From Gekko japonicus (Eukaryota): a DNA stretch of 64,000 nucleotides. Both the position numbers and the translations under genes were made by a program. Under the pieces are notes generated by a model. It saw only the letters and a list, made by a program, of their open reading frames with translations, did not search any database and was not told where the DNA came from. This document shows positions 7,621 through 49,895 of the stretch, piece by piece; positions within the stretch are counted from its first letter, which is position 1; every line of letters starts with the position of its first letter. The stretch is taken from positions 413,381 to 477,380 of the forward strand of contig NW_015162497.1 of the NCBI RefSeq assembly GCF_001447785.1. The letters are read 5' to 3'.

Positions 7621-8093
7621 CAAGAGGCGGGACCTGCGATACTCGCAGGGGGGGAAGTATTCCCCACAGCTCCTGGCCTGCAGAAGCAGGAGATGCGGCA
7701 GCAAGTGAGCCCAGCCTTCTCCCTCCCCCCTCCCTCCCCCCTAGTGGCGGTGGCGAGGCTGGCCCGCCAAGCTTTCTCCTTCCCCCTCCCTCCCCCTCAA
7801 CAGTGGTGGCGGTGAGGCCGGCCTGCCAAGCCTTCTCCCACCCCTCACCCCCTGTGGCAGTGGCAAAGCCTTCTCAGAGCATTCCCTGTGCATGCGCAGG
7901 GAACGCTCTTTTACTTTTGGGGGGATTTAAGTATCCCCCCTATAGTTTTTTTACAGTTTTTAGATTTTTCTGCACATCTGGGGATTGCCCCAAATGTGCA
8001 GGAAAATCTCCCTGCCCCCCAGGTGCCCCCGATGTGCGGATTTAGATATCTGCATGCGGGGTGTGTGTGTGCCTTGGCTATTAGATATATAGA
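7621..8093 (-). mobile_element. Non-autonomous Helitron, CTTG-ended family
   Basis: Minus strand A|TCTATATATCTAATAGCC ... hairpin CCTGCGA-GTA-TCGCAGG, then TCCCGCCTCTTG|T; homologous to 38204-38833. Confidence 0.8.
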
Positions 8094-8106
8094 TAAGTAA
8101 ATAAAC

Positions 8107-16145: not shown

Positions 16146-16207
16146 AACCTTCAAACAGAGGGTTAACTCCATAACTGTCACAGATATTCTTAGGTGTTAT
16201 TTATAAT

Positions 16208-18216: not shown

Positions 18217-18387
18217 GGTTGCCAGCTCTGAGTTGGGAAATAGCTGGAGATTTGGGAGGTGGATGTTGGGAAGGGTGGGGTTTGTGGAGGGGAGGAAACT
18301 CAATAGAGTATGATGCTATAGAGTCCCTTCCAAAGCAGCCATTTTCTCCAGGCGAACTGATCTCTGTCACCTTGAGATTAGTTATAA
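18217..18387 (+). mobile_element. TAGGGTTGCC-type MITE (hAT-like), interrupted by a Helitron
   Basis: GGTTGCCAG...GCTATAGAGTCCCTTCCAAAGCAGCCATTTTCTCCAGG; same family as 22422-22609. Confidence 0.7.
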
Positions 18388-18804
18388 CAAGGGGTGGACC
18401 CACGGTACTCGCAGAGCTCCAAACGGATGTCCAAAGTCAGAAGGCGGAGGAGGAAGCAGGAGGAGGAGGTAAGTCCCCCCCATCCTGCCGGTTCCTCCCC
18501 CACCCCCCCTGCTCGATCTCCCCCCTCTGCCTTCCCCCGGCTTCGAAGCGACTCGCTGCCCTTCCCGCCACCCCCTGCCTCCGAAGCGAGTCCCCCCCCA
18601 CCCCGGCACCCATGGCAAGGCCTGACGCCTCGTCCTCCGCCATCATCATCCCCATCCTGCTGGTTCCTGCCCTGTCTTTCCCCCCGCGCTCTTTCTCCCC
18701 CCTCTTGCCTTCCCCCCCGGCTCCGAAGCGAGGGCCGAGCGGAGCAAACGAATAGCTGTCTCAAAAGGAAGGAATATGAAATACCAGTTATAAGGGACTG
18801 AGGT
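18388..18804 (-). mobile_element. 3' part of a CTTG-family Helitron (runs into the gap)
   Basis: Minus strand ends CTGCGAGTACCGTGGG-TCCACCCCTTG|T; body matches 49720-49895 (CATCCTGCCGGTTCCTCCCC, GCTCGATCTCC). Confidence 0.75.
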
Positions 18805-18941
18805 NNNNNNNNNNNNNNNNNNNNNNNNNNNNNNNNNNNNNNNNNNNNNNNNNNNNNNNNNNNNNNNNNNNNNNNNNNNNNNNNNNNNNNNNNNNNNNNN
18901 NNNNNNNNNNNNNNNNNNNNNNNNNNNNNNNNNNNNNNNNN
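18805..18941. other. Assembly gap
   Basis: N run. Confidence 1.
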
Positions 18942-21472: not shown

Positions 21473-21783
21473 TAGGGCTGCCAGGTGCCTTCTTCCTGCT
21501 GGCATGGGGCTTTGGGAGTGGTTCATGTGGTGGGCGGGGGTGTTACTGACATGCTGATTTCACTGCCGAACGTGATATCTGTGCAAAACTCTACGGTAAA
21601 AATGGCTATAAACCATAGAGTTTTCCCCAAAAAGTAGGGTGTCGCTGCCGACACAAAGACGTCACTTGCAGAAGTGAGGTCAGTGTGTGGGCGATGTCAC
21701 GAGGGGATGTCTGGTGGTGCGGCAGGCTGGAGCCCACAAAAGCATGTGATCCCTTGCCCCCCACTTGGGGACTGGCAAGCCTA
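21473..21783. mobile_element. MITE with TAGGGCTGCCAG / CTGGCAAGCCTA termini
   Basis: Terminal inverted repeat plus internal AAAACTCTACGGT / ACCATAGAGTTTT palindrome; related fragment at about 17260-17558. Confidence 0.6.
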
Positions 21784-22057
21784 CTGTAACTTGAACACAA
21801 TAGTGAAAATATTTGGAACAGTTTCAGTACATTGTTATTAATAATTATGTGATCACATCATGGCATGCCACTGACTTATGAATATTCTAGAGCTGTGCTG
21901 ATGTAGCCCTAGAAAACCATCTGTGTGCAAGTTATCGGGGGTCTGCAGTTGGGTATTGCTGGCCCTGAAAGTTGTCTGATTTACCCAGCATTAGATCAAG
22001 TAGGCTGTAACTGAAGCACTCAAAGCCTCCCTGGAATGACTGCCAGATTTGGTAACA

Positions 22058-23794
22058 TCTCTATATAATAATCCTTTTAGCATACTGGCTGTTTCCAGCT
22101 CTCCCATTGGCTGTGTTGTGCACTCCATCAGCCATTGGCCCATCAGCAGCCACTCAAGAGTACTCGCATGCCATTGGCTGGGTGCTGGATCTGCTCCTCC
22201 TCCCTGCCCACTCCCACTTCAGCCACTGTTCCCTGTCAGAATAACTGGCAAACGGCTCTCTCTCCTGACAAAGACACTTCTCCTGCATGGCTCCTCTGTG
22301 GGACAAACTTTTCCCTCAGTGGCTGTTGGTAGGCAACCAAGCTTGGTTTTGTCAGTAAAAAGACAAAGGAAGGAAACCTTTTCCAGGCCTTTGTGAGGAA
22401 CTCATTGGGGCCAGTCCTGACTAGGGTTGCCAGCTCCAGGTTGGGAAATTCCTGGATATTCTGTGTCTAAGGAAGTCAGAGTTTGGGGAGGGGAGAGGCC
22501 TCAGAATGCCATAGAGCCCACCCTCCAAAGCAGTTATTTTATCCAGGGGGATGAGTTCAGTTGTGATACTTGGCGATCTTCAGGTTCCACCTGGAGGTTG
22601 GCTACCCTAGGCATAGCAGTTAGCACTTCAGAGCAGGGTCTGCCAGACCCAGGTTCTTGCTGTGGAAACTGTGATTTTGGACCAGTCACAGACTTTCAGC
22701 ATAACCCCCTTCCCCGTGCACTGTCAGCTTGGCCACTTTACTGTCAGAATAAACAACTAGGCAACCAAGCTTGGTTCTGTCAGTAAAACATGGTTGTTGT
22801 AGAAATCAAAAGCGGGAGAGGAGAATGATGTAAGCTGCTTTGGTCCCATTGCAGAGAAAAAACTGTACTTTTCCTCCTGGGGAACCATTGTTGCCAAACT
22901 CCAGGTGATGGCTGGGGATCACTCAGAATTGCAACTTCTCTCCAGATGGGAGAGATCAGTTCCCCTGGAGAAAATGGTGGACTGTGTCCTTATATCCTGC
23001 TGAGATGGCCCTCCTATGACAGCCAATGTGGCATAGCAGTCAGGGCTTCAGAGTAGAGGCTGCAGGCGTGGAGGGGAGATGGAAAGCTGAAGAATGAGGG
23101 GCAGATAATGGGAGGTTGATGATTGGCTGGGAAGGAGATAGGGTTGCCAACTCCAGGTTGGGAAATTCCTGGAGATTTGAGGGGTGGAGCCTGGAGAGAG
23201 TGAGGTTTTAGGCGTGATGGGACCTCAGACAGGTACAGTGCCATAGACTTCACCCTCCAAACCAGCCATTTCCTCTTGGGGAACCTTTGTTGCCAATCCC
23301 CAGATGAGCGGTGGAGATCACTCAGAATTACAACTGATCTCCAGGAGGGAGGGGGGAGGAGATGGAAAGCTGAACTCAGAGGGCCAGATAAAGGTAAGTT
23401 GATGGCTGGCTGGCTGGCTGGGAGATAGGGTTTCCACCTCCAGGTTGGGAAATTCCTGGAAATTTGAGGGGTGGAGCCTGGAGAAGGTGGGGTTTGAGGA
23501 GGGGGGGCCCTCACAGGTACAATGCCATAAACTCCACCCTCCAAACCAGCTCTTTCCTCCTGGGAAACCATTGTTGCCAATGTCCAGGTGAGGGGTGGGG
23601 AATCACTCAAAATTACAACTGTTCTTCAGGTAGGAGAGATCAGTTCCTCTGGAAAAAATGGTGGACTCTGTGTCATTATATGCTGCTGAGGTCGCCAGAT
23701 CAAATTGATGCCTAGTGCCCAAAGCCGGGGCACCCACCCAGAGCCTCTTTCTAGAGCTCGTTGTATTTATTTCCACAACGAGCCTTATTCCTAG
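22058..23794 (+). mobile_element. Non-autonomous Helitron (CTAG end) carrying MITE and SINE cargo
   Basis: A|TCTCTATATAATAATCC start; hairpin GCTCGTTG..CAACGAGC, then CTTATTCCTAG|T. Interior: MITE 22422-22609, Squam3/MIR-type SINE at about 22610-22860, and tandemly repeated linker-MITE units to about 23700. Confidence 0.75.
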
Positions 23795-25338
23795 TTGTGA
23801 AATAATTCTCAGAAACTTAACAGAATTTCCCCCCCCCCTTTAAATGTTCCTTCCCATTCCTTAGGATACAACATTTCTCTTCAGCTAATCAAAGACTTAG
23901 GACCAATCAGGGAAATTTCTTTGGCCAATCACACATGGAGGGGAGGGAAAATTTAAATTATATTGGCCATTTTGTGCTTCATGTGTGCTGCACTGCTCCT
24001 TGTGTCCAGAGAGAGATGCCATGGTTGGGTTAGCAAGACCATGTCCAGAGGGATCCTTACTGTACTGTGTTTCTTAACAAACAAGTTTGATCAATTTATT
24101 ATCATCGCTAGGTAGTCTATCCTCAGCACATGTTCCCTGGTGGAAGGTTAGTAAAGGGTTGGGTGGACATGTTTGATTGCTGTTGGAGGGAGTTCAGGAG
24201 AGGTATTATTTTTGTTGCTTTTGGGTTCTGTGCAGTTTAATATTTGATTTTTTTTTTATCTTCTGCCTTTGCTTTTCTGTGCTTCTGAGAAAGATACTCC
24301 GGAAGTACTACTTTTACACACAATTACTAAGCTTTATTTTTCAAAAAGCCATTCTAGAAAACCAACTGCCATTTTCACACCTTGGACAACAGCATTTCTG
24401 AAAATCCATAACACCTATACACCTTCCCTTTCTTAAATTACAGAATTAAAACAGTGTTATTCCAGTGGATGCCCCACAAATAATACAGATCTAGTCTGCT
24501 ATATCTTCAACAGCCGTATGTTTTGGTAACTCCTCTGAGGGAAGATGTCAAGTTATGCTGAATGCCGAACTGTAGGTCATTGTTATATTATTTCGTGGGA
24601 AGGTTTACTCACGGAAGGTTAGTAGTTAATGTTGTTTCTGACCTTTCATATTTACTGTTGATGCTTCAGCAGATTCTTACAAGGCAATAAATAATCATTG
24701 GGCCTTGTTTGAATAGCTTTCACTGCCTGTTGTTCTTAGCAAGTAATGCTGTAATGATTTCCACAACAAAAGATGAACCATGAAAGCAACATTAAATATA
24801 TTCTGAACAATAGCTTTGTCCTCCCCCCTCCAAAAACCCCTCAGCAGCTCTGCATACCCAGGCTTTTGTGGATATGATAATTCACTGTGAACAAGAACAG
24901 ATGAAAATATAAGTGGACTGTGCCAATGGCCTTGTCTTTTTCCATCTACTGTTTTGTGCTCAATCTGTTCTATAAAGTACTATATATTGAATGTAGGCAA
25001 CAGAAATGGATTGCCAAATCTTTTAGCTTATATCATAATTTATGCGTAGGGTAATTTTCTCAAGCTTTACCATATATGAACTATTAGACTGTTCTCCATC
25101 AAGTTTTTCCTAGTTTTCAATTTTATATGTTCTATCAGTTCCCCCCCCTATGGAAGGTTGAAAAGCACAGTAACCTTATTGCTTCAAACCTGAAATACAA
25201 ATTTAGCTGTGTAAGGACATAACTAGACTTGTCTTTTCTTTGTAAGAATATGAAACTCGGTGCATAGGCTTAGGTCTTGAGGCCTTTCCTTGCATAGGAA
25301 ACGTTCCTTCATAAAAGTTATGATAAATCTTTCATGGT

Positions 25339-25583
25339 ATTGTTACAAGACAAATGTGGACAATCATGACCTAATCAGAGGACAAATCTAAAGAAAACAG
25401 TCGTGAGTGTCTGACCCACAAATCAAGCAGTCAACAAGACTTGCAAAGAAAATGCTTTCCATATATTATGGTCAAAAGCACTACAACACAGTACAATAAA
25501 CAAATTCCTTCAGTCAACAAGTCTTTTTGACTGCTTGATTTGTGGGTCAGACTCTCACGACTGTTTTCTTTACATTTGTCCTC
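25339..25583. mobile_element. Fold-back insertion, probably Penelope-like
   Basis: 66-bp inverted arms 25378-25443 / 25518-25583 (3 mismatches); 14-bp flanking duplication AAATCTTTCAYGGT (25325-25338, 25584-25597). Confidence 0.6.
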
Positions 25584-27023
25584 AAATCTTTCACGGTGCC
25601 ATCTTAAGCAGAGTTACACCCTTCTAACTCTACTAAAATACATTTGGCTTAGAAAGATTTAACCCTGTTCAGAATGACACAGTGAGTTCTGTTGGGAGTT
25701 GTGTTTTATATAAATTATAGCCAGTTTGGAAATTTAGTTTTGTTCACTGGCAACCTTAAAAGTATAAAATGATGTGTTTTGGAAGGGCCAGTCATCCTTT
25801 AATTTGTTTGACTCAGTCCTAAATTCACTGTTGAAAATTAATTATGCCAGTCAAGCCTTGAAACATATTCATGAAGACTCCTTAGATGGCTTTCTAATGT
25901 CAGCCTCTTTGTTAGAGAAGATAATATTGAATGATGGCATACATAACAGTAAAACTCAAAGATTATTTGAGTCATTATCAGGTAAGAGTATAAAACATGA
26001 ATGGTTCCCAAATGGTACCCATATGCAGAAAATTTGCAAAGCTGTTATCTTTTTAGTTTCCACACTTGTAGTGTACTTTCAAACCATTCTATGGACCAAA
26101 CTATTCTAGTCTTACAATTAATAAATAATATTGTCCCATTCCACACCATTCCAGCCTTTATTGCATCATATACAAAAGACAAAAGTTTGGTATATATTGC
26201 TTGGATTTTGTAGTTCAACTTAGTAATAGCTGCTGGTTTTCTGTCTAGAGGGCACATAAGGCTACCCTGTTGCAGAAAGCATTTTTCAATTATTTGGTAT
26301 TCTGTTTGCATTGTTTTATAAGTGGATTGTAGTTGTACTGCTGATTTATGCTGGGTTTTTTTGGTTAATTTAAGGTTATATTTCGAGCCACCCTGAATTC
26401 ATGAAAAGTACAAATATAATTTTTAAAAATTAAATAATATGTAAAGTATTGTCTTTCGCTCTCTAACATGCTATATTACCATACTAACTTAATCTGTGGC
26501 CATTCAGAAGGGTGAATTTAGAAGGAAATAAAAGTAGTCACATTTATAATTCTCAGTTCTATCAAAGAAGTCTGTTTTATAAGGTAAAACTTTGTAAAGT
26601 GCAACCAAAATTTTCATTGAATGAATATGTTAATTAATTGCCTATGGGAGTGAAATGCTACTCTTCCATAGAATGATTTTTTTCCTGTTTGTTTTAAGTA
26701 TGTTGTAGTCTTTTAATATGTAACCATAACTGTTGTTCTTGACTACAATTAGGAACTTTCCCAAAGTCATCAGAGTGATAATGGATTAGAATAGTGATGC
26801 ATTTCTCTTTAATATGGCTGGAATACTGACTTTCTGGTAGGAAAAATTGGTAGGATCTAAAAAGGGTTTTCCCCCCCCCCTTATTTCTGACAAAATTGGG
26901 AAGCAAGATAATTCAGAGTGGATATGAGAGTCAAGGGAATACAAGTAATATTGAAGAAATAATGAGCTATTGATCTCCTAAGGGAACTCTCTGAAAAGCT
27001 CATCTCAAAAGCTATACAGTCCC

Positions 27024-27217
27024 CAGGCTAGCCCAGTCTTGTCAGATCTTGGAAGCTAAGCAGCATTGGTATTAGTAGTAGTTTGATGGGGGACCACCAC
27101 GGAAGTCCAGGGTTGCCATGCAAAGGCAGGCAATGGCAAACCACCTCTGGATGTTTCTTGCCTTGCCCTGTGGGGTTGCTGTAAGTTGGCACCAGTTTGA
27201 TGACACTTTCCACCACC
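27024..27217 (+). mobile_element. 5S-derived SINE flanked by a ~160-bp direct duplication
   Basis: GTCAGATCTTGGAAGCTAAGCAG head, GGCAATGGCAAACCACCTCT tail; flanks 26860-27023 and 27218-27372 align. Confidence 0.8.
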
Positions 27218-28519
27218 AAAGAGGATTTTTTCCCCTGACAAAATCTGGAAGCAAGTTAATGCAGAGTGGCCATGAGAGTTGAGGGAATGCAAGTCATATT
27301 GAGGACATGATGAGTTATTGATCTCCTGGGGGAATCCTCTGAAAAGTTCATCTCAAAAGCTATAAAGTCCCACATACTGCTGAAGGTATCAGACAGATTA
27401 AAGTCTTCTTTCTTGGGCTTGTTCTTTTTCTTTTTCTGTTCTTTTTCCAACATGTGGTGTGTGGAACATTTGAGTTTTGAGATAGAGAAGAGGAAGGAGT
27501 AACAATTTAAATGGCTTATTGACTCTCTTGATGAGAAACTAGAAATAGAAGATAGAATAACCATTATGAAAGCCTACAAAGAAACTTGCTTCCAGTGTGC
27601 TAAAAGACTGTTACTGCATTGAATGTCCTTGGGAGTTTTCCTTTTTCTCCACTGATAACAAAGTCAGACACAAAATCTGTGTAAGATTAACAGCTTCAAG
27701 GAAGTTGTATGTATCATTCCTAGTATAGAGGACACAGGAATCTGTCATCTAGGATTGCCTCTTCTATTTGGTAGCAGACAGAGCTCTTGTAACAATTGCC
27801 TCATATTGGAAAAAGGGTTTCTACATGTCCAGGTTGCCCCTTACTTAGTGATAGAAGGCCTGTTTTGGGGAGTCCCTGGTTAAATTAACTGCCAGTAATC
27901 CATGTAATACCTTTCTCTCCCAGTAGCCTTTGTCAAATTCTTATGCTCTAAATGGGACCCACCTACAATTCATTTTTCTCAGTGATAAAATAATATTTTC
28001 CCTCTTCTCCTCTCCTCAAGGTGTACAAGTAGCATTTTTCTTCCAATGTAAAGATTTGGAAACTGTGACTTCCTAATTTCCTTTACAGAGATGTACAAAA
28101 TAGTAAATTAAACTCTAAAGGCAGGGCATGTAAATGCATCTCCCTCATTTGGGGGAGGAGGAAATAGTACTATTTTATTTTTGAGGAAGAGAATTCCTTG
28201 TGAACAACCAATCAGACATTTCACTAAAGGAAACTATAGATTTTGAAGTTTTGTATGCCAACCAGAGTAACAGTCAATTATGACTGAAAACTGTTACGAG
28301 CTTTGTTTGCTGCAGTTTGGGATGAACCTGCAGGTCCCATATGGCAATGTAAGCATATGCATATAGCTGTCCTAGAAAGAAACTGCTTGTGCATTTTTTT
28401 ATGTAGAACTTGCACAAAAATTAAACAATATGAATTGTCCTATCCTTTCTGCCTGTCTCTTCACAAATCCTTCCAACTGCTGATCAAAAGGTCTCTTGAG
28501 TATCTTTCTTGGAAAAAGC

Positions 28520-28665
28520 TGTGACTCAGTGGTAAAGCATATTCTTTGCATGCAGAGAAAGTTTTGGGTTTGGTACTGGACATTTCCTTTATATGCCTGA
28601 GAGCCTCTGGAAGTTAGAATAAGCAATACTTAGCTAGATGAGCCAGTGTCTCAGTATATCTTCAT
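28520..28665 (+). mobile_element. Squam2-like SINE, degraded
   Basis: CTGTGACTCAGTGGTAAAGCAT...GCAATACTTAGCTAGATG. Confidence 0.6.
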
Positions 28666-30342
28666 AAATTTCTTTTTTGTTCTCCAAATGCAAAGGACCT
28701 TCAGGCAGAGATCTCTGTGATGGCATCTCAGTAGCTTGGCAACCTTGATTTGTGGATGTTGAGAGTCTATAGTGCAATAATCCTGGAGACTTCTGAGGGA
28801 AATTGATTGCATTTTATGTATTTCAAAATAATCTATCCTACTTTTTTACTGCTAAGCAGCACCCAAGGCCTACACTGCAAGTCACACCCAACAGACATGG
28901 CGGTACAATAAAAACAGCTATTTAAAAAATCTTTCCCACACAATAACTGTTGCCTTGCAAACTGATCATTATATATTCCCAAGGGCTATTTCTTTGTTCT
29001 CATTCATATATTCTGCCTAATTTTCTGGAGAATCTATGGCTCCAGTTAGCAAAGTCTGGATATTCACTGACAGTTATCCTACTTTGCTAGATTTTATAGC
29101 AGACTTTTTTTTCTTCTTTGTATGGACTGGCTGGTATTGTGTACAGTTATAAATCCATTCAAGGCAAGCTCTGTTTAAGTTTTTTTCCAGCTCAGTACCA
29201 ATGCACTTTGAGAGTCAATGCCAGCTGTAGTTGCAGTTATATACCCAGTAGGGCTTAGGCCTCTGTCTGAGCTTTACATAACAGACACTTCCTGAAATGG
29301 GTGGCTTTGCCCAATACTCCAGTGGTTCATAGGTTGGAACCTTAATACTGTACTAATGGCACTCTTGGGACTGACCCTGTATCTTTGACTGCTATTCCAC
29401 TAGAGTTCACTTTGAAGCCTCTTAAAAAAAAAAGACACATCCATTTTATTTCTTTATAGCATTTCAGAACTGGAGGTACTCTCTGTCCATAAGTGTGTGT
29501 GCATTTTTCAGGATAGCACAGTTGGATTCAGTCTCAACCCAAACTTTTCACTTAAGTGAAATTATTGATTCAGTGGGAAGCAGAAAGTTATTCTTTCATT
29601 CTAGTTTAAGTTTTTCTCCTCCAAAGGAGAATAACTGACACTGATGAGATGTTAGAAGGCTCCTCGGTTTCATCTTAGAGGGTCCTGAGCATCCAGACAA
29701 AATGAGCCCATTGCTTTCACACAGTTCTTGCTAGGAAAGAAGAGCTCCTGTTTCTAGATAGATTAGGGACACAATTGTCATAGTCTACACATTTGTGTGA
29801 AGAAGCATCAGTGGATGTTACAGTTTATTCACTAAGAGACACAGCAGCATGTATAGAAATATTGATTTCTAAAAGTCTCCTGCCTTCTCCTGTGATGACT
29901 TTCTGATAACAGGCTGTGCCTTATTTCCTGTTGAAAGCCAAATGGTGGGCCAGATGGCCTGAACAACTTTATAACCCACATTCTTCACACTTCCATGCTA
30001 GAAGCTAGACTGTAAGGCTCCACACTAGGCCCCACATGCGAGAAGTCACATACACAATGAAGTAGCTGGAAACTGGGTCACATGACTGCAGGAGGGGCTT
30101 ACAAACTTCTAGCCATTCCTCTGTTGCAGCTATGGCAACCTGAAATTGGCCACACACTCCTGCTGCTCATGATTGGCTGAATGGCCATGGCTAATCATGA
30201 TTAGATTGGGGTATAATTGATCGATCCCTATGGGAGTGAGTTCTCTTGCTCTTGCTCTCTCCCCTGTCATTGTCTGTTTTATTGCACCTGAAATGCTGTC
30301 TCTTGGAAAACAAAGACCTACTTTGTGACTTGGACCACAGGC

Positions 30343-30492
30343 NNNNNNNNNNNNNNNNNNNNNNNNNNNNNNNNNNNNNNNNNNNNNNNNNNNNNNNNNN
30401 NNNNNNNNNNNNNNNNNNNNNNNNNNNNNNNNNNNNNNNNNNNNNNNNNNNNNNNNNNNNNNNNNNNNNNNNNNNNNNNNNNNNNNNNNNNN
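30343..30492. other. Assembly gap
   Basis: N run. Confidence 1.
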
Positions 30493-30694
30493 ACTTGGAT
30501 TCCAAGTCTAAAATCTTGTGCCTAACACTCACCACATACGCTACTTGGATTCCAAGTCTAAAATCTTGTGCCTAACACTCACCACATACGCTACTTGGAT
30601 TCCAAGTCTAAAATCTTGTGCCTAACACTCACCACATACGCTACTTGGATTCCAAGTCTAAAATCTTGTGCCTAACACTCACCACATACGCTAC
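30493..30694. repeat. Perfect tandem repeat, 4 x 50 bp
   Basis: Unit ACTTGGATTCCAAGTCTAAAATCTTGTGCCTAACACTCACCACATACGCT, identical copies, abutting the gap. Confidence 0.95.
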
Positions 30695-31154
30695 CATTGG
30701 AGGGTAAAAAGCATGTATCTCTGGATTGAGTTGCTAATGTGTTCTGTCCCAGATGCCAACTAAGGGTTTGGAATCTCTTCCCTTAGGAAAAGCAGGGACT
30801 AGTGAAAAGAGGTTCTGGTGGCAAATTGTCTGGAAACCAGAGAGGGTATGGACCATCTCATGGTTTGTTGTTTAATGTACTGAAAAGTACAGGATCCCCT
30901 CTCATCCCTGGACTGGCCTGGGTGGGGTAATCCTGTACACAGCATTTGTCCTCTTTCTGAGCACAACCTCTGATTGAAAAGGCCTGAAGGACTGGGTTTT
31001 TATTTACACCCTACAAAGCATTACCATTTTTAGAAATGGCTCTCTGCAGAGTGAGCTTTTGGCAGAAGAGGTCCTGAAACCAAGAACTGCCAAGTACTGG
31101 TTAACTCCTGCCCCATTTGATTCATCCCTGTTTACAGACCTGCCTGAAGTTACA

Positions 31155-31335
31155 TGGTGGTGGAGGAAAGTGCCATCAGGTCACAGCTGACTTGTTTTCA
31201 AGGCAAGAGATGTTCAGAGGTGGTTTGCCATTTCCTGCCTCAGTATCATGACCCTGATATTCCTTGGAGGTCTCCTTTCCAAATACTAACCAGGGCCAAC
31301 CCTGCTTGGCTTCCAAGATCTGAGCTATCCAGGGT
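31155..31335 (-). mobile_element. 5S-derived SINE
   Basis: Reverse complement of the 5180 and 27024 elements (GAGGTGGTTTGCCAT...CCCTGCTTGGCTTCCAAGATCTGA). Confidence 0.75.
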
Positions 31336-31819
31336 GTCAAGTTACATAAATGTCTAAAATAATGGACAGTGTTTAAATTGAAACAAATTTCAGCATTTAG
31401 TTTACACTGTACTTCTGAACTCCCATAATACTGTCACTAAGCAGGGTTGTGGGAGAGACCCAGAGAGACAGATGTGCATTCAAGTTATCCTTAGAGTGTC
31501 CAATTCAGGAAATGTTTTACAGTGTTTCTACTTCCCAAACTGTTCTTTAAACTTCTCCGAGTTAAAAAAAAAAAAAAAGAAAAGAAAGGGGAAAAAACCC
31601 AGAAACTACTGTTTAATAACTTGGCATAAACTCTTTGGAGGATGACAGTGGAATATGTGAGCCAGTAGATTTCTTCCTTCTGAAAACAAACAAACAAATA
31701 AATAAACAACTTGTGTATTTAGGAGGCCAGCTGGGCTGGGAGACGGAACCTAGGAGAGAGCTGCTGGGAAGGCGTTTTTTGCCTTTCCTAAACTGCTGAA
31801 TTCCTGGGGAGCATTAACT

Positions 31820-32140
31820 GAAGTAAGCAGTGAAGTGGCTAAGTTTGCAGATGACACTTCAGTTGTTCAGGACAGTGAGAACCATGGAGGGCTATGAGGC
31901 GCTCCAGAGGGATTTCCCTTTGTCTCCTGGTGCCCTCCCCTGTCCTTAGGACCACAAATAGAACAGTATGTCTGGGGCAGTGATGCTTTGTATTCTTGGT
32001 GCTTGGGTGGCAATAGTGGGAGGGCTTCTGGAGTTTTGGCCCTGCTGATGGCACCTGGGTTTTGGCCACGGTATATGGCACAGAGCTTTGGATTGAATGG
32101 GTCAATAGCCTGAGCTGACACAGCTTCTCATGTTCTTATG
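31820..32140 (+). mobile_element. Internally deleted CR1 fragment
   Basis: SSEVAKFADDT (RT catalytic motif) joined to a CR1 3'UTR ending TTCTCATGTTCTTATG. Confidence 0.8.
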
Positions 32141-32627
32141 AAGATGGAAGCGCAACTCAATTGGCTGTGTTAGAATATGCACACATGAAAATCCAATTAT
32201 GCTGTCCACATGGATAGGAAGGAATATAATAAACCAGTGTGCTGAACACTGTTCAAAGTATCAAAACACCTGTCAAAATCAAGTCCCCATTTGCAAACAG
32301 TGAATAGGATGTGAACCCAATAGGCAGGATTGTTTGAGCATCCTTAGTGTATATCCATATCAGAAATTTCATGTGTGTTTCTCCTCTGTGTGCCTATCCA
32401 CTCTGTATGTATTTGTGAGAAATCAAGTAAGAGGCTGTCCTGTGTATGTGGGTCGTGAATATGAGACATCAGGCAATAGGCAGAGGAATGAAATGTTTCC
32501 TCCTCCATTCTTTCCAATTTTTTGCAGGTTCCCAGTTACATTCTACTGCCTTGTTGTAGATTACTGCCAGTGGGCTATCCTCTTGTAGCATTGTTTTTGG
32601 GTATCCCTTCCCTCTTCTCTTTTGTAG

Positions 32628-32782
32628 AAACTAAAAATAATTAAATATCACAATTTGTGACCTACAAACCCAACACAGAGACCATCTGCCACATCCTGTG
32701 GCCTCCCAGGAGCTTCACAACCCTCTTGTTTCAAAAGCCTCAAGCACAAACAAACAACAACAGGAGATTTATTGAGCTCCTG
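32628..32782 (+). other. Candidate non-coding or UTR exon
   Basis: Strong acceptor (CCCTTCCCTCTTCTCTTTTGTAG) and donor (CTG|GTGAGT); no convincing ORF. Confidence 0.35.
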
Positions 32783-34300
32783 GTGAGTATCTGGTGGGCT
32801 GAGTTTGGTTCAAAGGGTCTCAGACTGAGATGGTATGAACTACATGTTTTATCAGGGCTGCGTGGTTGGTATTTTGTAAGTATCTTTTATTATATTTTTG
32901 TATCACTCTACTTCTTTCCACAATAAAGTAATTGTTTAATTTAACTTTGGTGACATTCTCCGGCGTCAATGCATATTTTCAGAATTTTCAAAGAAGCTCT
33001 TTCATATTTTGTAGTTGATGCATACTGTTTTTCAGAGTTCAGTTAACATGGGATCTTGTCCAAAGTAGACTAAAGTCATTTGTAGAATAGTGGAAGTCAG
33101 TTGGATTGTGGCTGTACTTGACTGACAGGATATCGTTAAAATACACTGTTGTAGTTCAGCATTGTTTCACAAACTATAAACATAGTATCTGTGTACTTAC
33201 TAGAAAAAGTTGGCCATGTATGCCTGGAATATGCATATTATTTCTCAAAATTAGATACAAGTATGTGCTTTGTGGAATATTCACAATGATATGTCTTTGA
33301 AAGCGATAGCAATAATAATGGCATTAATAAACTGCACCTATATTTAGTACCATTTGTCCACAAACACCAAATTGCTTTTTAAATATTAACTAAGCTTCAG
33401 CACACCCCTGTGGAGTAGGTAATTATCATTGCTATAACCATTTTGCATATGAGATGAAAATAGATGAATGGTCTTGCATTTTACAAACAGGAAATGAGGC
33501 ATGCTGTCTTTTGTAAGTGTGCATGGGTTTCTTTTTAATGTGTTACACTGACCTCTGAAGATTGCACATTTCAAAGCCTAACATCATAGGTGGATATAAA
33601 ACTGACTATTTTACACATAACGTTTTCTGTTATAGTTGGTTAAGAGACAAAGACTGTGATTCAGAGAGGCCATGTAGGACACGTGTGCATTCTGTGGGGT
33701 AGTGTGTGTGTGCTTTGGTTTTTTTCATTACAGAAGCCTGACACCACCACTCCCAGCCAGGCAGGTGCCACATCATAAGATGATTTTAAATGAAACTAAT
33801 TTTCAGAAATGGCTTGAGATGCACTGTGACTGTTGTGCATTACATTATTAAAGTTGATGTGAAAGATGGCTTATTAACACTGCATTATCTCACTGTTTTA
33901 TATGCTGCTTTGGGAGTGGGTGTAGTTTCTCCTAATATTGCAATTGCACTCATTCAAAAAAAAAAAAAAAACCTGCATCTGCTGTGTGTTCTAATATAAA
34001 GTGTTTTATGCTATTTATTCCAATTTCCTACCCCCTATCAGTTACATTTCTGAAAATCAAGAAATTCTGGTTGCAATATTGCTCAGTCTAATAACAAATT
34101 TTCTCCTTTCTGATAAAATTATACCTCTTTTTTTCCCCAAGCAGTGGTATCTAGAAACTTGGTTTGGAAATAAAAGGAAAGTTGTTTAGAGTGCCACTGT
34201 CTATTTGCAGTAACAGGGGAGTTCTATTGATCAGCTCTTTGGTTAAATTATAGTGATATTTATTAAGACATAGTAGTTAGAGTTAGAATGCTTCAAGCGA

Positions 34301-34677
34301 CTATATATTGTATTGCTCTCCAGTGTATTTCCAAGCATTACTATGGAGGACTGGATGCAAACTACAATATAATATACATTTACTTTTTAGTTATATAATT
34401 TTGTAACAAAATGAAATAATTATGTAAACTAGGAATTCTGCAAATTGGCCCTAAGATTATGGTCTACTGCTGCATTTTGCTTATATTGTATATACTATAT
34501 ATTTTATTGCGCTCCAGCGTATTTCCAAGCATTACTATGGAGGACTGGATGCAAAATGCAATATAATATACATTTAGTTTTTAGTTATATAATTTCATAA
34601 CAAAATGAAATAATTATGTAAAGCAGGAATTCTACAAATTGGCCCTAAGATTATGGTCTACTGCTACATTTTGCTTA
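34301..34677. repeat. Tandem duplication, 2 units, period 194 bp
   Basis: CTATATATT.TATTGC.CTCCAG.GTATTTCCAAGCATTACTATGGAGG at 34301 and 34495; high identity throughout. Confidence 0.9.
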
Positions 34678-34914
34678 GCTGCCACTGGGCGATGGAAAAA
34701 AATGTCTGGAGATGGAGACAGTTGGATTCTACAGGCACAGGAAGTATTCTTTCTGTAGTATAACCTGGTTGTTGAAACAAACACTTAACCCCATGCGGCT
34801 TCAGTTTCTCAGCTGTCCTTGCATGTGGCAGCCTGAAATGCTGTGCCCCCCTCTGCCTAGTAACAGTGTTACCACAATCCGCCTAAATACATGAACATAC
34901 TTTTAGACAGACAC

Positions 34915-35409
34915 AGTTTCGTCAGTATTGTGAGTATTTCGGCCAGCCGAATGTCAATTTCAGCCCCATTATATCCTATGGGCCCCTGAAGTCAATAGCG
35001 AAAACATGGGTATATTCTGGGGGCTGGAGGGTAGGGGGCTTGAGGGAGAGACTCCAAATTCGCAGGTTAGCTGCTGGATCCGCTCCCCAAGATACCCAGC
35101 AAGTTTCAAGAGCATTGGACCAGAGGGTCCAATTCTACGGACCCCCAAACAGGTTGCCCCTATCCCCTCCATTTTTCTCTGTGGTGGGGAAAATAGTTAT
35201 TTTTTCCCACCATAGAGAACTATACCCTATGTTTTCGCCATTGACTTCAGGGGCCCATAGGATATATTGGGGCTGAATTGCCGCTGAAATTCCGCGGCAA
35301 GCCAATTCAGATCAGAGAATCTGAATCGGCCTGCAGCAGCCCGAAAGGGGTCCGGATGGGCCATTTTCGGGGGTGAATTTGGTTCAGATCAACTGAATGC
35401 ACATCCCTA
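34915..35409. mobile_element. MITE with long internal inverted repeats
   Basis: About 56-bp arms 34959-35014 / 35221-35277; ends TGCACATCCCTA; CpG-rich; left terminus not recognised. Confidence 0.65.
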
Positions 35410-35433
35410 CCCACTAGAATTCCTTTTGCTGTG

Positions 35434-35580
35434 AACATAAGAACATAAGAGAAGCCAATGCTGGATCAAGCCAATGGCCCATCTAGTCCAACTCTCTGTC
35501 ACACAGTGGCCAAAAATACCAGGTGCCATCAGGAGGTCCAGCAGTGGGGCCAGGACATTAGAAGCCCCCTCGGCAAGCAC
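35434..35580 (-). mobile_element. CR1 3' end
   Basis: (AACATAAG)2 tail plus 3'UTR. Confidence 0.75.
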
Positions 35581-35718
35581 ATATGAGAGTGGGAATATCT
35601 TTGTGTATCCTGGGCTCAAATGATGTATAACTATAGAGTGCTGTGGAACTAGTTTAGAGAAGCAGTGGAAACCAGTGAGGCTCCATTTGAGTACATTGAC
35701 TCAAGGATACACATCATA

Positions 35719-38203
35719 TCCTTATTCTATTTTCAAGAGTTTTTTTCTGTGCGGATACTTATTTCCACCAACAGGGGGCTCACTCTCCCCCAACAGCTTT
35801 TCCTACATAGTCAGTAGACATCCTGGGTTTGTAGGAAAATCCAAAAACTAAAAAAATCTCTTCAGGGATGGCTGAATTCCTCCCAAAACCTTTTGAAATG
35901 GCCTCTGCAGGGATCTGCTTCAGGCATCAACGGTGAGAGATTAGAATGTTCGGGGGTGTGTGTTTCTAACTGGCTCTGTCAGTAAAAGGGTGGGGGAAGG
36001 GCCCTTTCCTGGCCTCTTTTGGCCTCTGAGGGAGGAAGGGAGCTTTGGGGCCAGGCCTCACAAGGTTTACCAGTGCCAGGCTGGGGGATTTCTAGAGATT
36101 TTGTGGTGGACTCTAAGGAGGGCTGGGTTTGGGAAGGGAGGGGCCTCAGCTGGGTATAATGCCACAGAGTCCATCCTCCAAAGTGGCTATTTTCTGCAGG
36201 GAAACAGACCTCTGCTGTCTAGAGTCCAGTTGTAATTCTGGGGGGTCTTCAGGTCCCATTTGGAGGTTGGCAACTCTAGGCCTGGCAGTAGTCTAGGGTT
36301 GTATAGATTCTGCCCCCCAGGCTAGTCCAGCTAGAATTCTGCACTGGCACAATACATTACTCAATCACCCAGAGAGATAGGCTCTCTGGATTTAAACACA
36401 ATAGCCACCAGGAATCTCTAAATTTAATCCCTCACCAACCTGAGATTAGAGATCCCCAGAATCTCAGTTGGCATGTGGGTTTTACACATGCAAGTCTGTC
36501 TGGAGCTGCACAGTTAATCTTACACAGGTAGCATATGCCCAGTTAGACACAGGAAAAAGGCTTGGAGTCCAGTTACTACAATCCAGACACTATTTATAAA
36601 CAAGAATAAAGTTCATTCAGTACAGGCTTAGCACAGACTAATCAGGATTACAAAATAACAGCCTAGGCAACATATTTACCAACATCAGGGTAGTGTCCCA
36701 AAGTTCAATATAGTCTATTGGAAGAGTCCAGGTATCTTGAGAAACAATAGTTCCATCCTTGCAAGCACATGGTCAGCTCCCAAGGGAGTTCTTTGTTCTC
36801 TGTGGGACAGCATTTCCCAGGTGCAATTCAACAGTAGAGGTGCAAGAGAAAATCTGACTCTCCTCCAAGGGTCAGACAATTAAGAACCCCAATCTAATCA
36901 TGACTAGCCGTGGCCATCAGCCAATCACGGGTAGGAAGGGGGTGTCCAACTTTTGGGTTGTCATGGGAACAACATCTGAATGGTCCCTTAGAGCAGGCTC
37001 CTTGAAGTCTAGGACTTCCACTTAGAGGTGTGAAGAATGTGTGGTTATATGGCAGGCAATGGAGCTTCTCTGACCAAATGGTCAGCCATCTGGCTTGCAA
37101 CAGGAAACAAGGTATCAGAAGACATTCCAAGGGGGGAGGCAGGGGTTTATAGGAATCAATATTTCTATTCAAGGGTTACCAGGTCCCCCCTGATTTTCAT
37201 GACGCACCTAGCCTTGGCTGCTTGCTGCCGTTCATCAGCAGCCACCCTATGAAAGCCAGTGAGGTGCAGCAGTTAGAGCTTCAAAGTAGGGTCTGCAAGA
37301 CCCAGGTTCATATCCCCATCTTTCAGTGGAAGCTGACTGCGTAATTTTGTACCAGTCACACATTTCAGCCTAACCAACCTCACAGGGTTGTTGTGCAGAT
37401 AAAAAGGAGGAGGGAATAATGAAAGCTGCTTTAGTCCCCACTGTGGAGAAAGACTGTAATTTTCCTAGGTAGAGGCTGGGGGGTGGAGATGGAAAGCAGA
37501 AGACAGAGAGGCAGATAGAGGTAGGTTGGCTGTTGGGTGGGAAGGAAATAGGGTTGCCAACTCCAGGTTGGTAATGTCATAGACTCCACCCTCCAGCCAT
37601 TTTCTCCAGAAGAACCACCATTGCCAGCCTCCAGGTGAGGACTGGAGATCACCCAGAATTACAACTGTTGTCCAGGCAACAGAGATCAGTTCCCCTGGAT
37701 AAAATGGATGTTTTGGAGGGTTGAGTCTATGGCATCATACCCTGCTGAGGCTGCTTTCCACCACAAGCCTCCACCCCCAAATCTCCAGGAATTTCCCAAC
37801 CTGGAGCTGGCAGCCCTAAGGTGAATTGACCTCTGTAATGCTGGGAGATCCGTTGTGATTCACAGAATGCTGCCACTGCTGCTGTGGGGAGAGAGGAAGC
37901 AGGTGGGTGGCTAGGAGCACTGCCACCACTGCTGCTGCTGTTCTGTGGAGTGGGGGAGGAAGCAGGCAGGATACTGGGAGAGTGATGGGGGCACAAAGAA
38001 AGAATGATGGGGTGGGGGCAGAAAGAGAGAAAAACAAAGAAAAAGATGACAGGTCAGAAAGAGAGAGGAGGAGGAGAAATAGAGAGTAAGAAGAGGGGGA
38101 CAGAGGGGAGAAATAGTGTGAGAGAGGTAGGGGGTGAGGAGAGGAAGCAAAGGTGTGATGAATGCGATAACCATCCTGCAAGTTTCTTGCGGGTCTCCAC
38201 TTG
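35719..38203 (+). mobile_element. Composite CTTG-family Helitron carrying a MITE-SINE-linker-MITE cassette and a nested LTR
   Basis: A|TCCTTATTCTAT..CTGTGCGGATA..AAAATCCAAAAA 5' region aligns with 49130-49290; 3' hairpin CCTGCAAG-TTT-CTTGCGGG, then TCTCCACTTG. Confidence 0.65.
36300..37151 (-). mobile_element. Solo LTR-like element nested in the Helitron cargo
   Basis: TGTATAGATTCTGCCCCCC ... GGGGGGAGGCAGGGGTTTATA; homologous to 10448-11386. Confidence 0.6.
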
Positions 38204-38833
38204 TCTATATACTAATAGCCAAGGCGCCCCCTGCATGTGGATATCTAAATCCACACATCAGAGGCACCTAGGGAGCAAAGAGATTTTCCTGCACCTTTGA
38301 GGCGATTCCCAAATGTGCATAAACATCTGAAATCTATAAAAAACTATAGGGGGGATATTTAAATCCCCCCAAAAGTAAAAGAGCATTCCCTGCACATGCG
38401 CAGAGAACACACTGAGAATTGCCCCACTGAGGCTGCCACTGGGGGAGGGCGGGAGGATGCTTGGTGGGCTGGATGTTCAGGCCTCGCTGCTGCCACGGGG
38501 AGGGAGGAAGAAAGTTTAGTGGGCCTGACGGCTGGGAGCTGTGCAGACCTTGCCATTGGTACTGGGGGGCAGGGGAGAAGGCTTGGGGGGCTTGACGGGA
38601 GCCGCACAGGCCTCGCCATTGGTGTGTGGGGGGAGAAGCCTTGGCGGACCTGGCGGATGGGAGCTGCGCGGGCCTTGCTGTTGCTGCTGTGGGGGGGAAG
38701 GCTTGGCGTACCTGGCAGGAGCCGCACGGGCCTCACCGTTGGTGCTGGGGGGAGAGAAGGCTTACCTGTGGCTGCTTCCTCCTCTTCTGTATGGAGCTCC
38801 TCCCCCCGTGAGTATCGCGGGTCCCACTTCTTG
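38204..38833 (+). mobile_element. CTTG-family Helitron with an internal ~60-bp tandem array
   Basis: TCTATATACTAATAGCC start; hairpin CCCGTGA-GTA-TCGCGGG, then TCCCACTTCTTG|T; 4-5 GC-rich repeats at about 38500-38765. Confidence 0.8.
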
Positions 38834-39190
38834 TGCTTATCTAATTCCCTATTGAAGCTGTCCATGCTTGTAGCTGCCACCACCTCCTGTGGCAGTGAAT
38901 TCCATGTGTTAATCACTCTTTGAGTGAAGAAGTACTTCCTTATATCTGTTCTAACCTGACTGCTCAGCAATTTTGAGTGCCCACGAGTTCTTGTATTGTG
39001 AGAAAGGGAGAAAAGTACTTCTTTCTCAACCTGCTCTATCCCATGCATAATCTTATAAACCTCGATCATGTTACCCCTCCACCATCTATTCTCCAAGCTT
39101 AAAGAGCCCCAAGCGTTTTAACCTTTCTTTATAGGGAAAGTGTTCCAACCCTTTTATCATTCTAGTTGCCCTTTTCTGCACTTTTCTGTG
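38834..39190 (-). mobile_element. CR1 ORF2 C-terminal fragment
   Basis: RGNMIEVYKIMHG...RTRGHSKL...RKYFFTQRVINTWNSLPQEVV. Confidence 0.9.
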
Positions 39191-49129: not shown

Positions 49130-49895
49130 TCTTTATACTAATACTGAAGTCCCCCCGTCTGTGCGGATAGCTAAATACGCACATCGGGGGGACCTGGGGG
49201 GGAGGGAGAGGTTTGTGCACACGTGGGGCGGTGCCAACGTGTGCACAAAAATCCAAAAAGTGGGAAAAAACCTCGGGGGATGTTTAAATCCCCCCGAAAG
49301 TGCCAGAGCGTTCCGTGCGCACGCGCACGAAATGCTCTGTGAACGCCGCAAGGCGAGCCGCGAGCCGGGAGAGGGGGGAAGACCGGCGAGGGCGGCTCGC
49401 AGCTCTGCCCTCGCATCGGAGCGGGGGGAGGAGAGAGAACAGCGAAATGGAGGAAAGGGGAGTGGGAATGAGGACACTCACCGGTTAACAGGCCAGAGCG
49501 TGCGCGAGGCCGGGAGAGAAGGGAGTTGACGGCCAAGGGAAGGGAAGGGGGGAGCAGAAGCTTCTGGAAATTGTAGTCTTCGATAAGCTACTCCCCTCCC
49601 CTGAACAGGCGAGACAGTCACGTTGGGAAAGCCGACGGGGGCATGTCAGGCTGAGCGGACGTTGTTGCTCAGAATGGAAAGTGACCTCTGGAATAGAAAC
49701 CCAAACCTCACTTCGGAGCCGGAGGGGGGGGAGGCCAGAGGGAGGAGATCGAGCGGGGGGGAGGATACGGGGGAGGAACCAGCAGGATGGGGGGGATTAC
49801 CTTCTCCTGCTGCTTCCTCCTGCGCCTCCTGAGTTCGGAGCTCAGTTTGGAGCTCCGCCTCCCCCACCCCCGCGAGTATTGCGGGCCACCCCTTG
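49130..49895 (+). mobile_element. Young CTTG-family Helitron (CpG-rich)
   Basis: A|TCTTTATACTAATAC start; hairpin CCCGCGA-GTA-TTGCGGG (49869-49885), then CCACCCCTTG|T; no TSD. Confidence 0.85.

What the first reader, a model, noticed from the sequence alone, without database searches (positions are those of the whole stretch)
22058..38203. Two Helitrons with different termini carry the same MITE-SINE-linker-MITE cassette: cargo exchange between rolling-circle families
Seen: the CTAG-ended element (22058-23794) and the CTTG-ended element (35719-38203) have dissimilar ends but the same ordered interior. It runs TGTCAGTAAAA...GGGCCAG leader (22350 / 35977), TAGGGTTGCC MITE, SINE with the same truncated junction (GAGAAA.ACTGTA.TTTTCCT; about 22860 / 37450), purine linker GTAGAGGCTG..GGAGATGGAAAGC..GGCAGATA..GGGAAGGARATAGGGTTGCCAACTCCAGGTTGG (about 23052 / 37468), then another MITE. 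One copy has the linker-MITE unit tandemly amplified; the other has an added LTR. Shared TE-TE junctions are unlikely to arise by independent insertion. Inference: Helitrons act as vehicles that re-amplify dead SINEs and MITEs and swap cassettes between families by end acquisition or recombination. This could explain the abundance of this MITE and distort TE age estimates.
Basis: partly seen in the sequence, partly recalled or inferred. Interest (0 to 1): 0.8.

Follow-up and report, generated by a model that had tools for sequence, protein, structure and literature searches.

The report
Two lizard Helitrons sharing one cargo
Two decayed, non-coding rolling-circle transposons (Helitrons) with different ends carry the same block of old SINE and MITE debris, which is a real but ordinary example of the mosaic make-up already known for Helitrons.

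Summary
Element A (22058-23794) and element B (35719-38203) share an ordered interior at 80-88% identity. It includes two non-TE stretches (leader, purine linker) and five odd TE-TE junctions, so it descends from one ancestral DNA segment.

Both elements look like non-autonomous Helitrons.
- A has A|TC, a 9-bp hairpin and CTAG|T. About 1x of raw reads pile up roughly 2,000-7,000-fold exactly between its ends, and homology stops at CTAG+T.
- B has A|TC, a hairpin and CTTG|T. It belongs to a CTTG-ended family with four more copies in the window, none of which carries the cassette.

In B the cassette sits at a single point of the family backbone and has no Helitron ends of its own. In A's family the non-MITE cassette parts have about the same read depth as A's own 5' region, so the cassette is amplified as part of that family.

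Not shown: that the CTTG-type composite ever transposed, how the cassette moved, or in which direction. Composite lizard Helitrons with SINE fragments, chimeric Helitrons, CTTG ends and amplification of nested retro-insertions are all published.

First-reader notes report similar composite Helitrons elsewhere in this genome. The N gap (30343-30492) lies between the elements and touches neither. Interest is modest.

The parts
22058..23794 (+). Element A: non-autonomous Helitron, CTAG-ended, high-copy family
   Evidence: Flanks read a|TC...CTAG|t. Raw-read depth rises from under 1 to about 1,850 and falls from about 6,800 to 0.65 at its borders. 3,345 reads lose homology right after 23795 into A/T-rich, unlike flanks.
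22058..22343 (+). A-family-specific 5' region
   Evidence: No significant match in B or in the CTTG copies. Depth is about 1,850-1,960. Paralogous contigs run from here into the leader and MITE1 (records 4, 14, 21).
22344..22421 (+). Leader: old flank plus the first bases of the SINE
   Evidence: Homologous to B 35971-36061. Its end, GCCAGT.., continues the SINE head once MITE1 is removed.
22422..22609 (+). MITE1 (TAGGGTTGCC...CCCTA), nested in the SINE head
   Evidence: Boundaries and decayed 8-bp flanks GTCCTGAC/GGCATAGC come. It is 80% identical to B's copy.
22610..22869 (+). tRNA-type SINE lacking its A-rich tail, with a private ~80-bp insert at 22707-22790
   Evidence: Aligns to B 37264-37459 at 83-88%. 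Depth at 22756 is only 45 against 1,843 at 22670. Tail truncation was judged against the SINE copy at 13870-13995.
22870..23051 (+). Partial unit 1 ((+)MITE piece plus inverted MITE), then a second SINE-head fragment (23005-23051)
   Evidence: 22870-23004 ~ 23553-23690 at 86%. Absent from B.
23052..23691 (+). Two tandem units of about 285 bp (23052-23345 and 23346-23691), each made of purine linker, (+)MITE and truncated inverted MITE
   Evidence: 23075-23351 ~ 23358-23638 at 82.7%, K2P 0.158. Linker depth is about 1,100-1,250 at 23067-23072.
23692..23794 (+). A-family 3' terminus: hairpin 23756-23764/23775-23783, then 11 nt ending in CTAG
   Evidence: 9-bp perfect stem, -9.1 kcal/mol, z -6.7. 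Depth is about 6,800 in the last bin.
35719..38203 (+). Element B: CTTG-family Helitron carrying the cassette
   Evidence: Flanks read a|TC...CTTG|t. Its 5' 200 bp align with copies C, D and E with 75 invariant columns. Its 3' part aligns with E positions 220-296.
35719..35920 (+). CTTG-family 5' backbone of B
   Evidence: Alignment A4. 67-71% identity to C, D and E.
35921..35970 (+). Unassigned ~50 bp between backbone and cassette
   Evidence: No significant match to A or to C, D, E or F.
35971..36309 (+). Cassette left part in B: leader, MITE1 (36062-36278) and a short SINE-head remnant
   Evidence: The flanks of MITE1 are GGCCTCAC/GGCCTGGC.
36310..37131 (+). B-specific ~820-bp interspersed repeat with TG..CA ends (solo-LTR-like)
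   Evidence: About 82% identical to 10452-11377. Flanks are AGGGT/AGGGG. Absent from A.
37132..37466 (+). ~115-bp spacer (37132-37245), a complete SINE head and body (37246-37459), then TTTTCCT (37460-37466)
37467..37862 (+). Linker (37467-37548) and a (+)MITE (37549-37608 plus 37819-37862) holding a complete inverted MITE (37609-37818)
   Evidence: The 8-bp duplication AGAAGAAC/AGGTGAAT was read against the MITE consensus in the loose ends.
37863..38203 (+). CTTG-family 3' backbone of B with hairpin 38175-38182/38186-38193 and terminal CTTG
38204..38833 (+). Copy C of the CTTG family, head-to-tail with B, no cassette
49130..49895 (+). Copy D of the CTTG family, no cassette
7621..8093 (-). Copy E of the CTTG family (473 bp), no cassette
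18388..18804 (-). Copy F of the CTTG family: 3' part only, cut by the N gap at 18805-18941

Best explanation
A and B are old, non-coding Helitrons of two different terminus families. Their bodies derive from one ancestral piece of TE-rich DNA. That piece held a tRNA-type SINE with a hAT-like MITE inserted in its head, cut short at its tail, followed by a purine-rich spacer and a second MITE that itself holds an inverted MITE.

In the CTAG family this block, with the spacer-MITE unit duplicated in tandem, is the body of the element. It has been copied with the element to a few thousand copies by rolling-circle transposition, driven in trans by an autonomous Helitron.

B is a chimeric 'exemplar' of the CTTG family. 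A roughly 1.1-kb version of the same block, later enlarged by an ~820-bp LTR-like insertion, entered the variable interior of a CTTG backbone at a single point. It came in without Helitron ends of its own. The most likely route is a DNA-level event (template switch or recombinational repair using one of the many cassette copies), not ordinary nested transposition.

Shown: the homology, the junctions, the end structures, the copy number of the A family, and the single insertion point in B. Inferred: the route of acquisition, its direction, and whether the B-type composite ever moved.
For: - Collinear homology, including non-TE leader and linker.
- MITE1 is nested in the SINE head in both copies; removing it restores a contiguous SINE head.
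- A's ends and hairpin.
- Depth is about 1,850-1,960 over A's own 5' region, 1,300-2,470 over the SINE, 1,100-1,250 over the linker and about 6,800 at the 3' end, against under 1 in the flanks. 3,345 reads diverge after 23795.
- Paralogous contigs in three species span 5' region/leader/MITE1 and inverted MITE/SINE fragment/linker (records 4, 5, 14, 15, 21).
- The CTTG family has shared 5' 200 bp and a shared hairpin-CTTG, with A at 4 of 5 5' flanks and T at 5 of 5 3' flanks.
- B's backbone is interrupted at one point, about E positions 200-224.
- No Helitron termini lie at the cassette borders in B.
- B keeps a complete SINE head and a complete nested MITE where A is truncated, while A keeps MITE sequence that B has lost. 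So neither copy derives from the other.
Against: - Only one CTTG-type composite was seen, and its junctions could not be counted genome-wide.
- No empty site was found for A or B.
- A's 5' boundary is fixed only to within a depth bin (22058 or 22060).
- B's 3' end is 63-69% identical to D and E over the last 30 nt, below the 80% family rule.
- The internal order of both elements rests on an assembly with N gaps. Independent short-read contigs break inside A, so a mis-join at a high-copy MITE is not excluded for B.
- No autonomous partner was identified.
Confidence: 0.62

Rival explanations
1. Nested transposition followed by erosion. A complete or 5'-truncated cassette-bearing Helitron of the CTAG type (or a relative) inserted into a resident CTTG Helitron, and later deletions removed its own termini.
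For: - Helitrons often insert into or next to each other; B and C abut head-to-tail.
- The 3'/5' depth ratio of about 3.5 in A's family suggests many 5'-truncated copies.
- The cassette sits at a single point of B's backbone.
- About 50 unassigned bp lie at the left border.
Against: - No trace of A's 103-bp 3' terminus, or of any hairpin-CTRR, at the right border.
- The right border is a MITE remnant running straight into backbone.
- Two independent terminal deletions are needed.
Confidence: 0.17
2. Common descent with end replacement. A cassette-bearing Helitron is ancestral, and the two families arose from it by acquiring new 5' and 3' ends through end bypass or read-through into neighbouring Helitrons.
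For: - End bypass, de novo 3' ends and insertion next to another Helitron are documented (PMC4224331, PMC4778049).
- The B|C head-to-tail junction is the substrate for such events.
- A and the CTTG family share the first 13 nt at 12 of 13.
Against: - Both ends would have to be replaced.
- B's 5' and 3' backbone parts are contiguous in cassette-free copies C, D and E. This fits an insertion into a backbone better than two separate end gains.
- 4 of 5 CTTG copies lack the cassette.
Confidence: 0.12
3. Assembly artefact. The join of CTTG backbone and cassette in B, or the internal order in A, was produced by mis-assembly across very high-copy MITEs.
For: - Three N gaps in 64 kb.
- The MITE has about 17,000x depth.
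- Independent contigs of the same species fragment into 170-200-nt pieces inside A.
Against: - The backbone resumes on the far side of the cassette at the matching position.
- B's cassette has its own private changes and is 12-25% diverged from A, so it is not a collapsed copy of A.
- Paralogous contigs confirm several junctions of the A type.
Confidence: 0.05
4. Independent insertions of the same abundant SINE and MITE families happened to fall in the same order in two unrelated Helitrons.
For: The MITE and SINE families are abundant.
Against: - The non-TE leader and linker are shared.
- Five junctions are shared at identical break points, including a MITE inserted at the same SINE position with related 8-bp flanks.
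Confidence: 0.01

Closest known systems
Helitron-2N3_AC of Anolis carolinensis (Novick et al. 2011, PMC3014272)
   Same: A non-autonomous lizard Helitron of about 2 kb and more than 1,000 copies. Its body contains fragments of a SINE and of another TE.
   Different: It is a young family (about 2% divergence) derived from a known autonomous element. Here the copies are old (15-25% between copies), the cargo is a SINE with nested MITEs and a tandem unit, and no autonomous partner was identified. Sequence relatedness to Helitron-2N3_AC was not tested because no library was at hand.
Helibat families, subfamilies and exemplars, and the chimeric HelibatN539 (Thomas et al. 2014, PMC4224331)
   Same: - The terminus-based classification exists because Helitron interiors are mosaic.
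[quoted passage not shown]
- Secondary retro-insertions inside Helitrons are then amplified with them.
   Different: Here the shared module is itself a multi-TE block present in two families whose ends both differ. In B it lies inside an otherwise continuous backbone rather than between ends of two neighbours.
Helraiser experiments (Grabundzija et al. 2016, PMC4778049)
   Same: CTTG-3' ends next to a T, de novo 3' ends by truncation or read-through, the hairpin acting as a termination signal, and head-to-tail junctions.
   Different: Those are experimental events in human cells and young bat families. Here CTTG is the stable end of a whole family, with 5 copies in 64 kb.
Maize Helitron mosaics (Yang and Bennetzen 2009; Du et al. 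2009). Recalled from memory and cited within PMC4224331, not read here
   Same: Elements with different ends share captured fragments, and captures are sequential.
   Different: The maize cargo is mostly gene fragments, not dead SINE/MITE composites.

Membership tests
Helitron (non-autonomous) | 5' end begins with TC | tested here: met
   A starts TCTCTATATAAT at 22058. B starts TCCTTATTCTA at 35719. C, D and E start TCT(A/T)TATA.
Helitron (non-autonomous) | 3' end is CTRR | tested here: inconclusive
   A ends in CTAG, which meets the rule. B, C, D, E and F end in CTTG, which is not CTRR. CTTG is a documented variant in Helraiser assays and in maize (PMC4778049).
Helitron (non-autonomous) | Short hairpin about 10-12 nt upstream of the 3' end | tested here: met
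   A has a 9-bp stem 11 nt from the end, z -6.7. B has an 8-bp stem 10 nt from the end. In the CTTG family the stem is kept, with one compensatory pair and several G-U changes.
Helitron (non-autonomous) | Inserted between host A and T, with no target-site duplication and no terminal inverted repeats | tested here: inconclusive
   The flanks fit. A precedes the element in A, B, D and E, and T follows in all. Family reads agree through the T at 23795. No empty site was found in the window or among the listed joints of related species; organism C shares the A insertion.
Helitron (non-autonomous) | Many dispersed copies sharing the same precise termini | tested here: met
   A's 3' end shows about 6,800x depth ending at 23794/5, and its 5' region about 1,900x. 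The CTTG family has five copies in the window. A's 5' end is not resolved to the base.
Helitron (non-autonomous) | A related autonomous element encoding Rep/helicase with the same ends | not tested
   None was looked for. The genome is not searchable with these tools.
[quoted passage not shown] | [quoted passage not shown] | tested here: not met
B against D and E gives 63-69% over the last 30, so B is a decayed or separate branch of the CTTG group.
hAT-like MITE | Terminal inverted repeats and an 8-bp target duplication | tested here: inconclusive
   The TAGGGTTGCC...GGCAACCCTA ends are present. The 8-bp flanks are decayed: 4/8 and 6/8 identical for MITE1, and 5/8 for the nested MITE in B. The superfamily was not tested by a transposase link.
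tRNA-derived SINE | tRNA-like head with A and B boxes, plus an A-rich tail | tested here: inconclusive
   The head resembles a tRNA by eye. ARAGORN and Rfam give no hit in the elements. The tail is missing compared with the copy at 13870-13995.
Solo LTR (the ~820-bp insert in B) | TG..CA ends, a 4-6-bp duplication, and related full-length LTR elements | tested here: inconclusive
   TG..CA ends and AGGGT/AGGGG flanks are present in B. The second copy at 10449-11380 has no matching flanks. No internal retroviral region was sought.

The most novel reading that the evidence does not exclude
The cassette is a module that repeatedly moves between Helitron lineages. Its nested MITE ends and palindromes would favour template switching during rolling-circle replication. 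Several terminus families would then carry it, and a measurable share of the apparent SINE and MITE copies in this lizard genome would be Helitron-borne rather than self-propagated.
Probability: 0.1. Interest if true: 0.55.

Novelty: new member of a known kind. Interest (0 to 1): 0.3.

Why it matters
For annotating this genome, a few thousand 'SINE' and 'MITE' fragments are really parts of one Helitron family. They should be masked and dated as such. They share the Helitron's amplification date, not that of the SINE or MITE, so repeat-landscape ages and copy counts are slightly biased.

The A/B pair is also a clean worked example of a module shared between two terminus families, and could be used to study how Helitron bodies are exchanged. 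It does not open a new question, because mosaic and chimeric Helitrons, TE cargo and CTTG ends are already described.

Tried and rejected
- Tandem Repeats Finder did not report the ~285-bp units in A. Self-blast did.
- A four-way MAFFT alignment of A with the CTTG 5' and 3' ends suggested weak similarity. Shuffle-controlled local alignments showed none beyond the first 13 nt.
- A possible extension of A-B homology upstream of the leader (ATGGC..CTCTG) was not significant.
- A 13-nt exact match, CATCAGCAGCCAC (22141-22153 and 37233-37245), does not extend and is treated as chance or a SINE-upstream scrap.
- A search for empty-site paralogues of A, B, C, D and E in the window found none.
- The listed read joints show no skip of the whole element A in the related organisms. 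Organism C contigs enter A from both flanks, so the insertion is shared.
- Rfam and ARAGORN found nothing inside the elements.
- The search of earlier findings by sequence came back blank, which means nothing.

Full report
**Setting and the gap**

The window has three N runs: 17096-17251, 18805-18941 and 30343-30492. The flagged gap lies 6.5 kb downstream of element A (22058-23794) and 5.2 kb upstream of element B (35719-38203). It touches neither element, and no reading frame is involved. Its right edge runs straight into four perfect 50-bp repeats. The gap only makes the A-B distance and linkage as good as the scaffold. I did not fill it or look it up.

The repeat content (tRNA-type SINE, TAGGGTTGCC MITE) and an earlier follow-up note (s1-830839) point to a lizard-type genome. 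I did not verify the species.

Yes. blastn of A against B gives a collinear chain of hits at 75-88% identity. Global alignments give:
- 80% over 286 aligned pairs for leader plus first MITE
- 85% over 212 for the SINE
- 80% over 168 for linker plus MITE
- 81% over 281 for A's third unit against B

K2P distances are 0.13-0.25.

Similarity of the MITE and SINE parts alone would prove nothing, because these families are abundant. The decisive points are two non-TE stretches and five shared junctions.
- The leader, 22344-22390 vs 35971-36015, scores above all 300 shuffles.
- The purine linker is 86% identical over 88 nt, E 9e-23 in the pairwise A-vs-B blastn.
- The five junctions are leader|MITE1, MITE1 end|GGCNTNGCAG, SINE tail|TTTTCCT, linker|TAGGGTTGCC, and (+)MITE interior|start of an inverted MITE.

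Independent insertion cannot give that.

**Finer anatomy**

- The first MITE sits inside the SINE head. When it and one flank copy are removed from A, the joined sequence aligns without a break to the complete SINE head in B. The 8-bp flanks are related: A has GTCCTGAC/GGCATAGC and B has GGCCTCAC/GGCCTGGC. The 'leader' is therefore the old flank of a SINE plus the SINE's first bases.
- The SINE lacks its A-rich tail (compare 13870-13995). It abuts TTTTCCT, which is an internal piece of the MITE.
- In B, the last MITE (37549-37608 plus 37819-37862) holds a complete inverted MITE (37609-37818). That inverted MITE is flanked by AGAAGAAC/AGGTGAAT, both derived from the MITE's own AGGGGAAC (with the MITE consensus).
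- In A the inverted MITE is truncated and the linker-MITE unit is repeated: 23075-23351 ~ 23358-23638 at 82.7%. That divergence means the duplication is old and probably a family feature, not a private event at this locus.
- A also has about 175 bp (22876-23051) that B lacks.
- B has an ~820-bp TG..CA repeat (36310-37131) with another copy at 10449-11380, plus a ~115-bp spacer that A lacks.

Each copy keeps something the other has lost, so neither derives from the other.

**Are they Helitrons?**

Element A:
- It reads a|TC...CTAG|t, with a perfect 9-bp hairpin 11 nt from the end (z -6.7).
- I laid about 1x of raw whole-genome reads from the same species label on 21000-25000 at 80% likeness. 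Both strands are summed in the depths below.
- Flank depth is 0.2-0.8.
- Depth over A's own 5' region (22072-22339) jumps to about 1,850-1,960.
- Depth over the MITEs is 4,600-17,400.
- Depth at single places in the SINE is 1,300-2,470.
- Depth in the linker is 1,100-1,250.
- Depth in the last bin is about 6,800, then 0.65 after 23814.
- 3,345 reads lose similarity right after 23795, into A/T-rich, mutually unlike sequence.

So A belongs to a family of a few thousand copies that ends exactly at CTAG plus the target T. The similar depth of A's 5' region, the SINE and the linker shows that these parts travel together. Paralogous contigs from three related species span 5' region-leader-MITE1 and inverted MITE-SINE fragment-linker (records 4, 5, 14, 15, 21). 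Contigs of a related species enter A from both flanks, so the insertion predates that split. No empty site was seen.

Element B:
- It reads a|TC...CTTG|t, with an 8-bp hairpin 10 nt from the end.
- Four further copies of this family lie in the window: C 38204-38833 (head-to-tail with B), D 49130-49895, E 7621-8093 on the minus strand, and F from 18388 on the minus strand up to a gap.
- B's first 200 bp align with C, D and E with 75 invariant columns.
- The hairpin is kept across copies with one compensatory pair.
- CTTG is not CTRR, but it is a documented Helitron end (PMC4778049).

**How does the cassette sit in B?**

B's 5' backbone runs to about position 218-224 of copy E. Its 3' backbone resumes at about position 201-220 of E. 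The cassette therefore interrupts the backbone at one point, at the start of the family's variable G-rich interior.

The cassette has no Helitron ends of its own. Nothing in B matches A's 286-bp 5' region or its 103-bp 3' terminus. The right border is a MITE remnant running into backbone. None of C, D, E or F carries the cassette.

This fits a DNA-level acquisition (template switch or recombinational repair with one of thousands of cassette copies) better than a plain nested transposition. Nested insertion followed by two terminal deletions, and common descent with replacement of both ends, are not excluded. I could not lay reads on B or count its junctions genome-wide. Whether the CTTG-type composite ever moved therefore remains unknown. 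A mis-join at a high-copy MITE is unlikely but not formally excluded.

**Comparison with what is known**

- Helitrons are classified by their last and first 30 nt precisely because their interiors are mosaic.
- Chimeras built from the ends of two Helitrons, and amplification of secondary retro-insertions, are described in bats (PMC4224331).
- New 3' ends by truncation or read-through, CTTG ends, and insertion next to another Helitron are shown experimentally and in genomes (PMC4778049).
- In Anolis, Helitron-2N3 is a 2-kb family of more than 1,000 copies that contains SINE and Poseidon fragments (PMC3014272).
- By the 80% rule, A and B are different families: 39% over the last 30 nt.

The finding is therefore a new, well-documented member of a known kind. 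The MITE is about ten times more abundant than the cassette-specific parts.

**Earlier notes from this scan**

Unchecked first-reader notes report Helitron-like composites with SINE and MITE cargo in several other windows of this genome (s1-815307, s1-821550, s1-818772, s1-816673, s1-835309, s1-818815). They also report the CTTG family and the B|C junction in this window (s1-833066, s1-833067). The read depth agrees with a high-copy composite family. I confirmed five of the six claimed CTTG copies.

Noticed in passing
window 30493-30694: Four perfect 50-bp tandem repeats start at the first base after the N gap (30343-30492). The gap probably sits inside an unresolved minisatellite.
   Followed up: partly
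window 38203/38204: Elements B and C abut head-to-tail (CTTG|TC) with no base between them. This is the arrangement from which read-through chimeras are known to arise. It was already noted as s1-833067.
   Followed up: partly
window 38834-38860: The sequence right after C's CTTG (TGCTTATCTAATTCC...) resembles a CTTG-family 5' end. The sequence downstream does not match the family. It could be a third, truncated element or chance.
   Followed up: no
window 22707-22790: A's SINE carries an ~80-bp insert. Its last 31 nt repeat 22330-22360 at 97% (GGCAACCAAGCTTGGTT.TGTCAGTAAAA). Read depth there is only 45 against about 1,800 beside it, so it marks a small subfamily or a local event.
   Followed up: partly
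window 18388-18804 (minus strand): The 3' part of a fifth CTTG-family copy runs into the N gap at 18805-18941. A partial MITE (18217-18365) lies just outside its 3' end, not inside it.
   Followed up: partly
window 38572-38763 and 7700-7860: The interiors of CTTG-family copies are G-rich minisatellites of about 58 bp with variable copy number.
   Followed up: no
window 34300-34677: A 194-bp AT-rich unit is repeated 1.9 times at 93% identity.
   Followed up: no
window 48768-48839 (-) and 3861-3932 (+): Two Rfam tRNA matches (53.2 and 30.7 bits). The first lies 290 bp upstream of Helitron copy D. They could be genes or SINE heads; this was not resolved.
   Followed up: no
window 5180-5270: This stretch looks 5S-rRNA-like by eye (…GATCTGGGAAACTAAGCAGGGTTGGCCCTGGCTAGTATTTGGTGGGAGACC…), possibly a 5S-derived SINE. 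Rfam gave no hit at the gathering threshold.
   Followed up: no
window 22141-22153 and 37233-37245: A 13-nt exact match, CATCAGCAGCCAC, links A's family-specific 5' region and the spacer upstream of B's SINE. It does not extend and its significance is unclear.
   Followed up: partly
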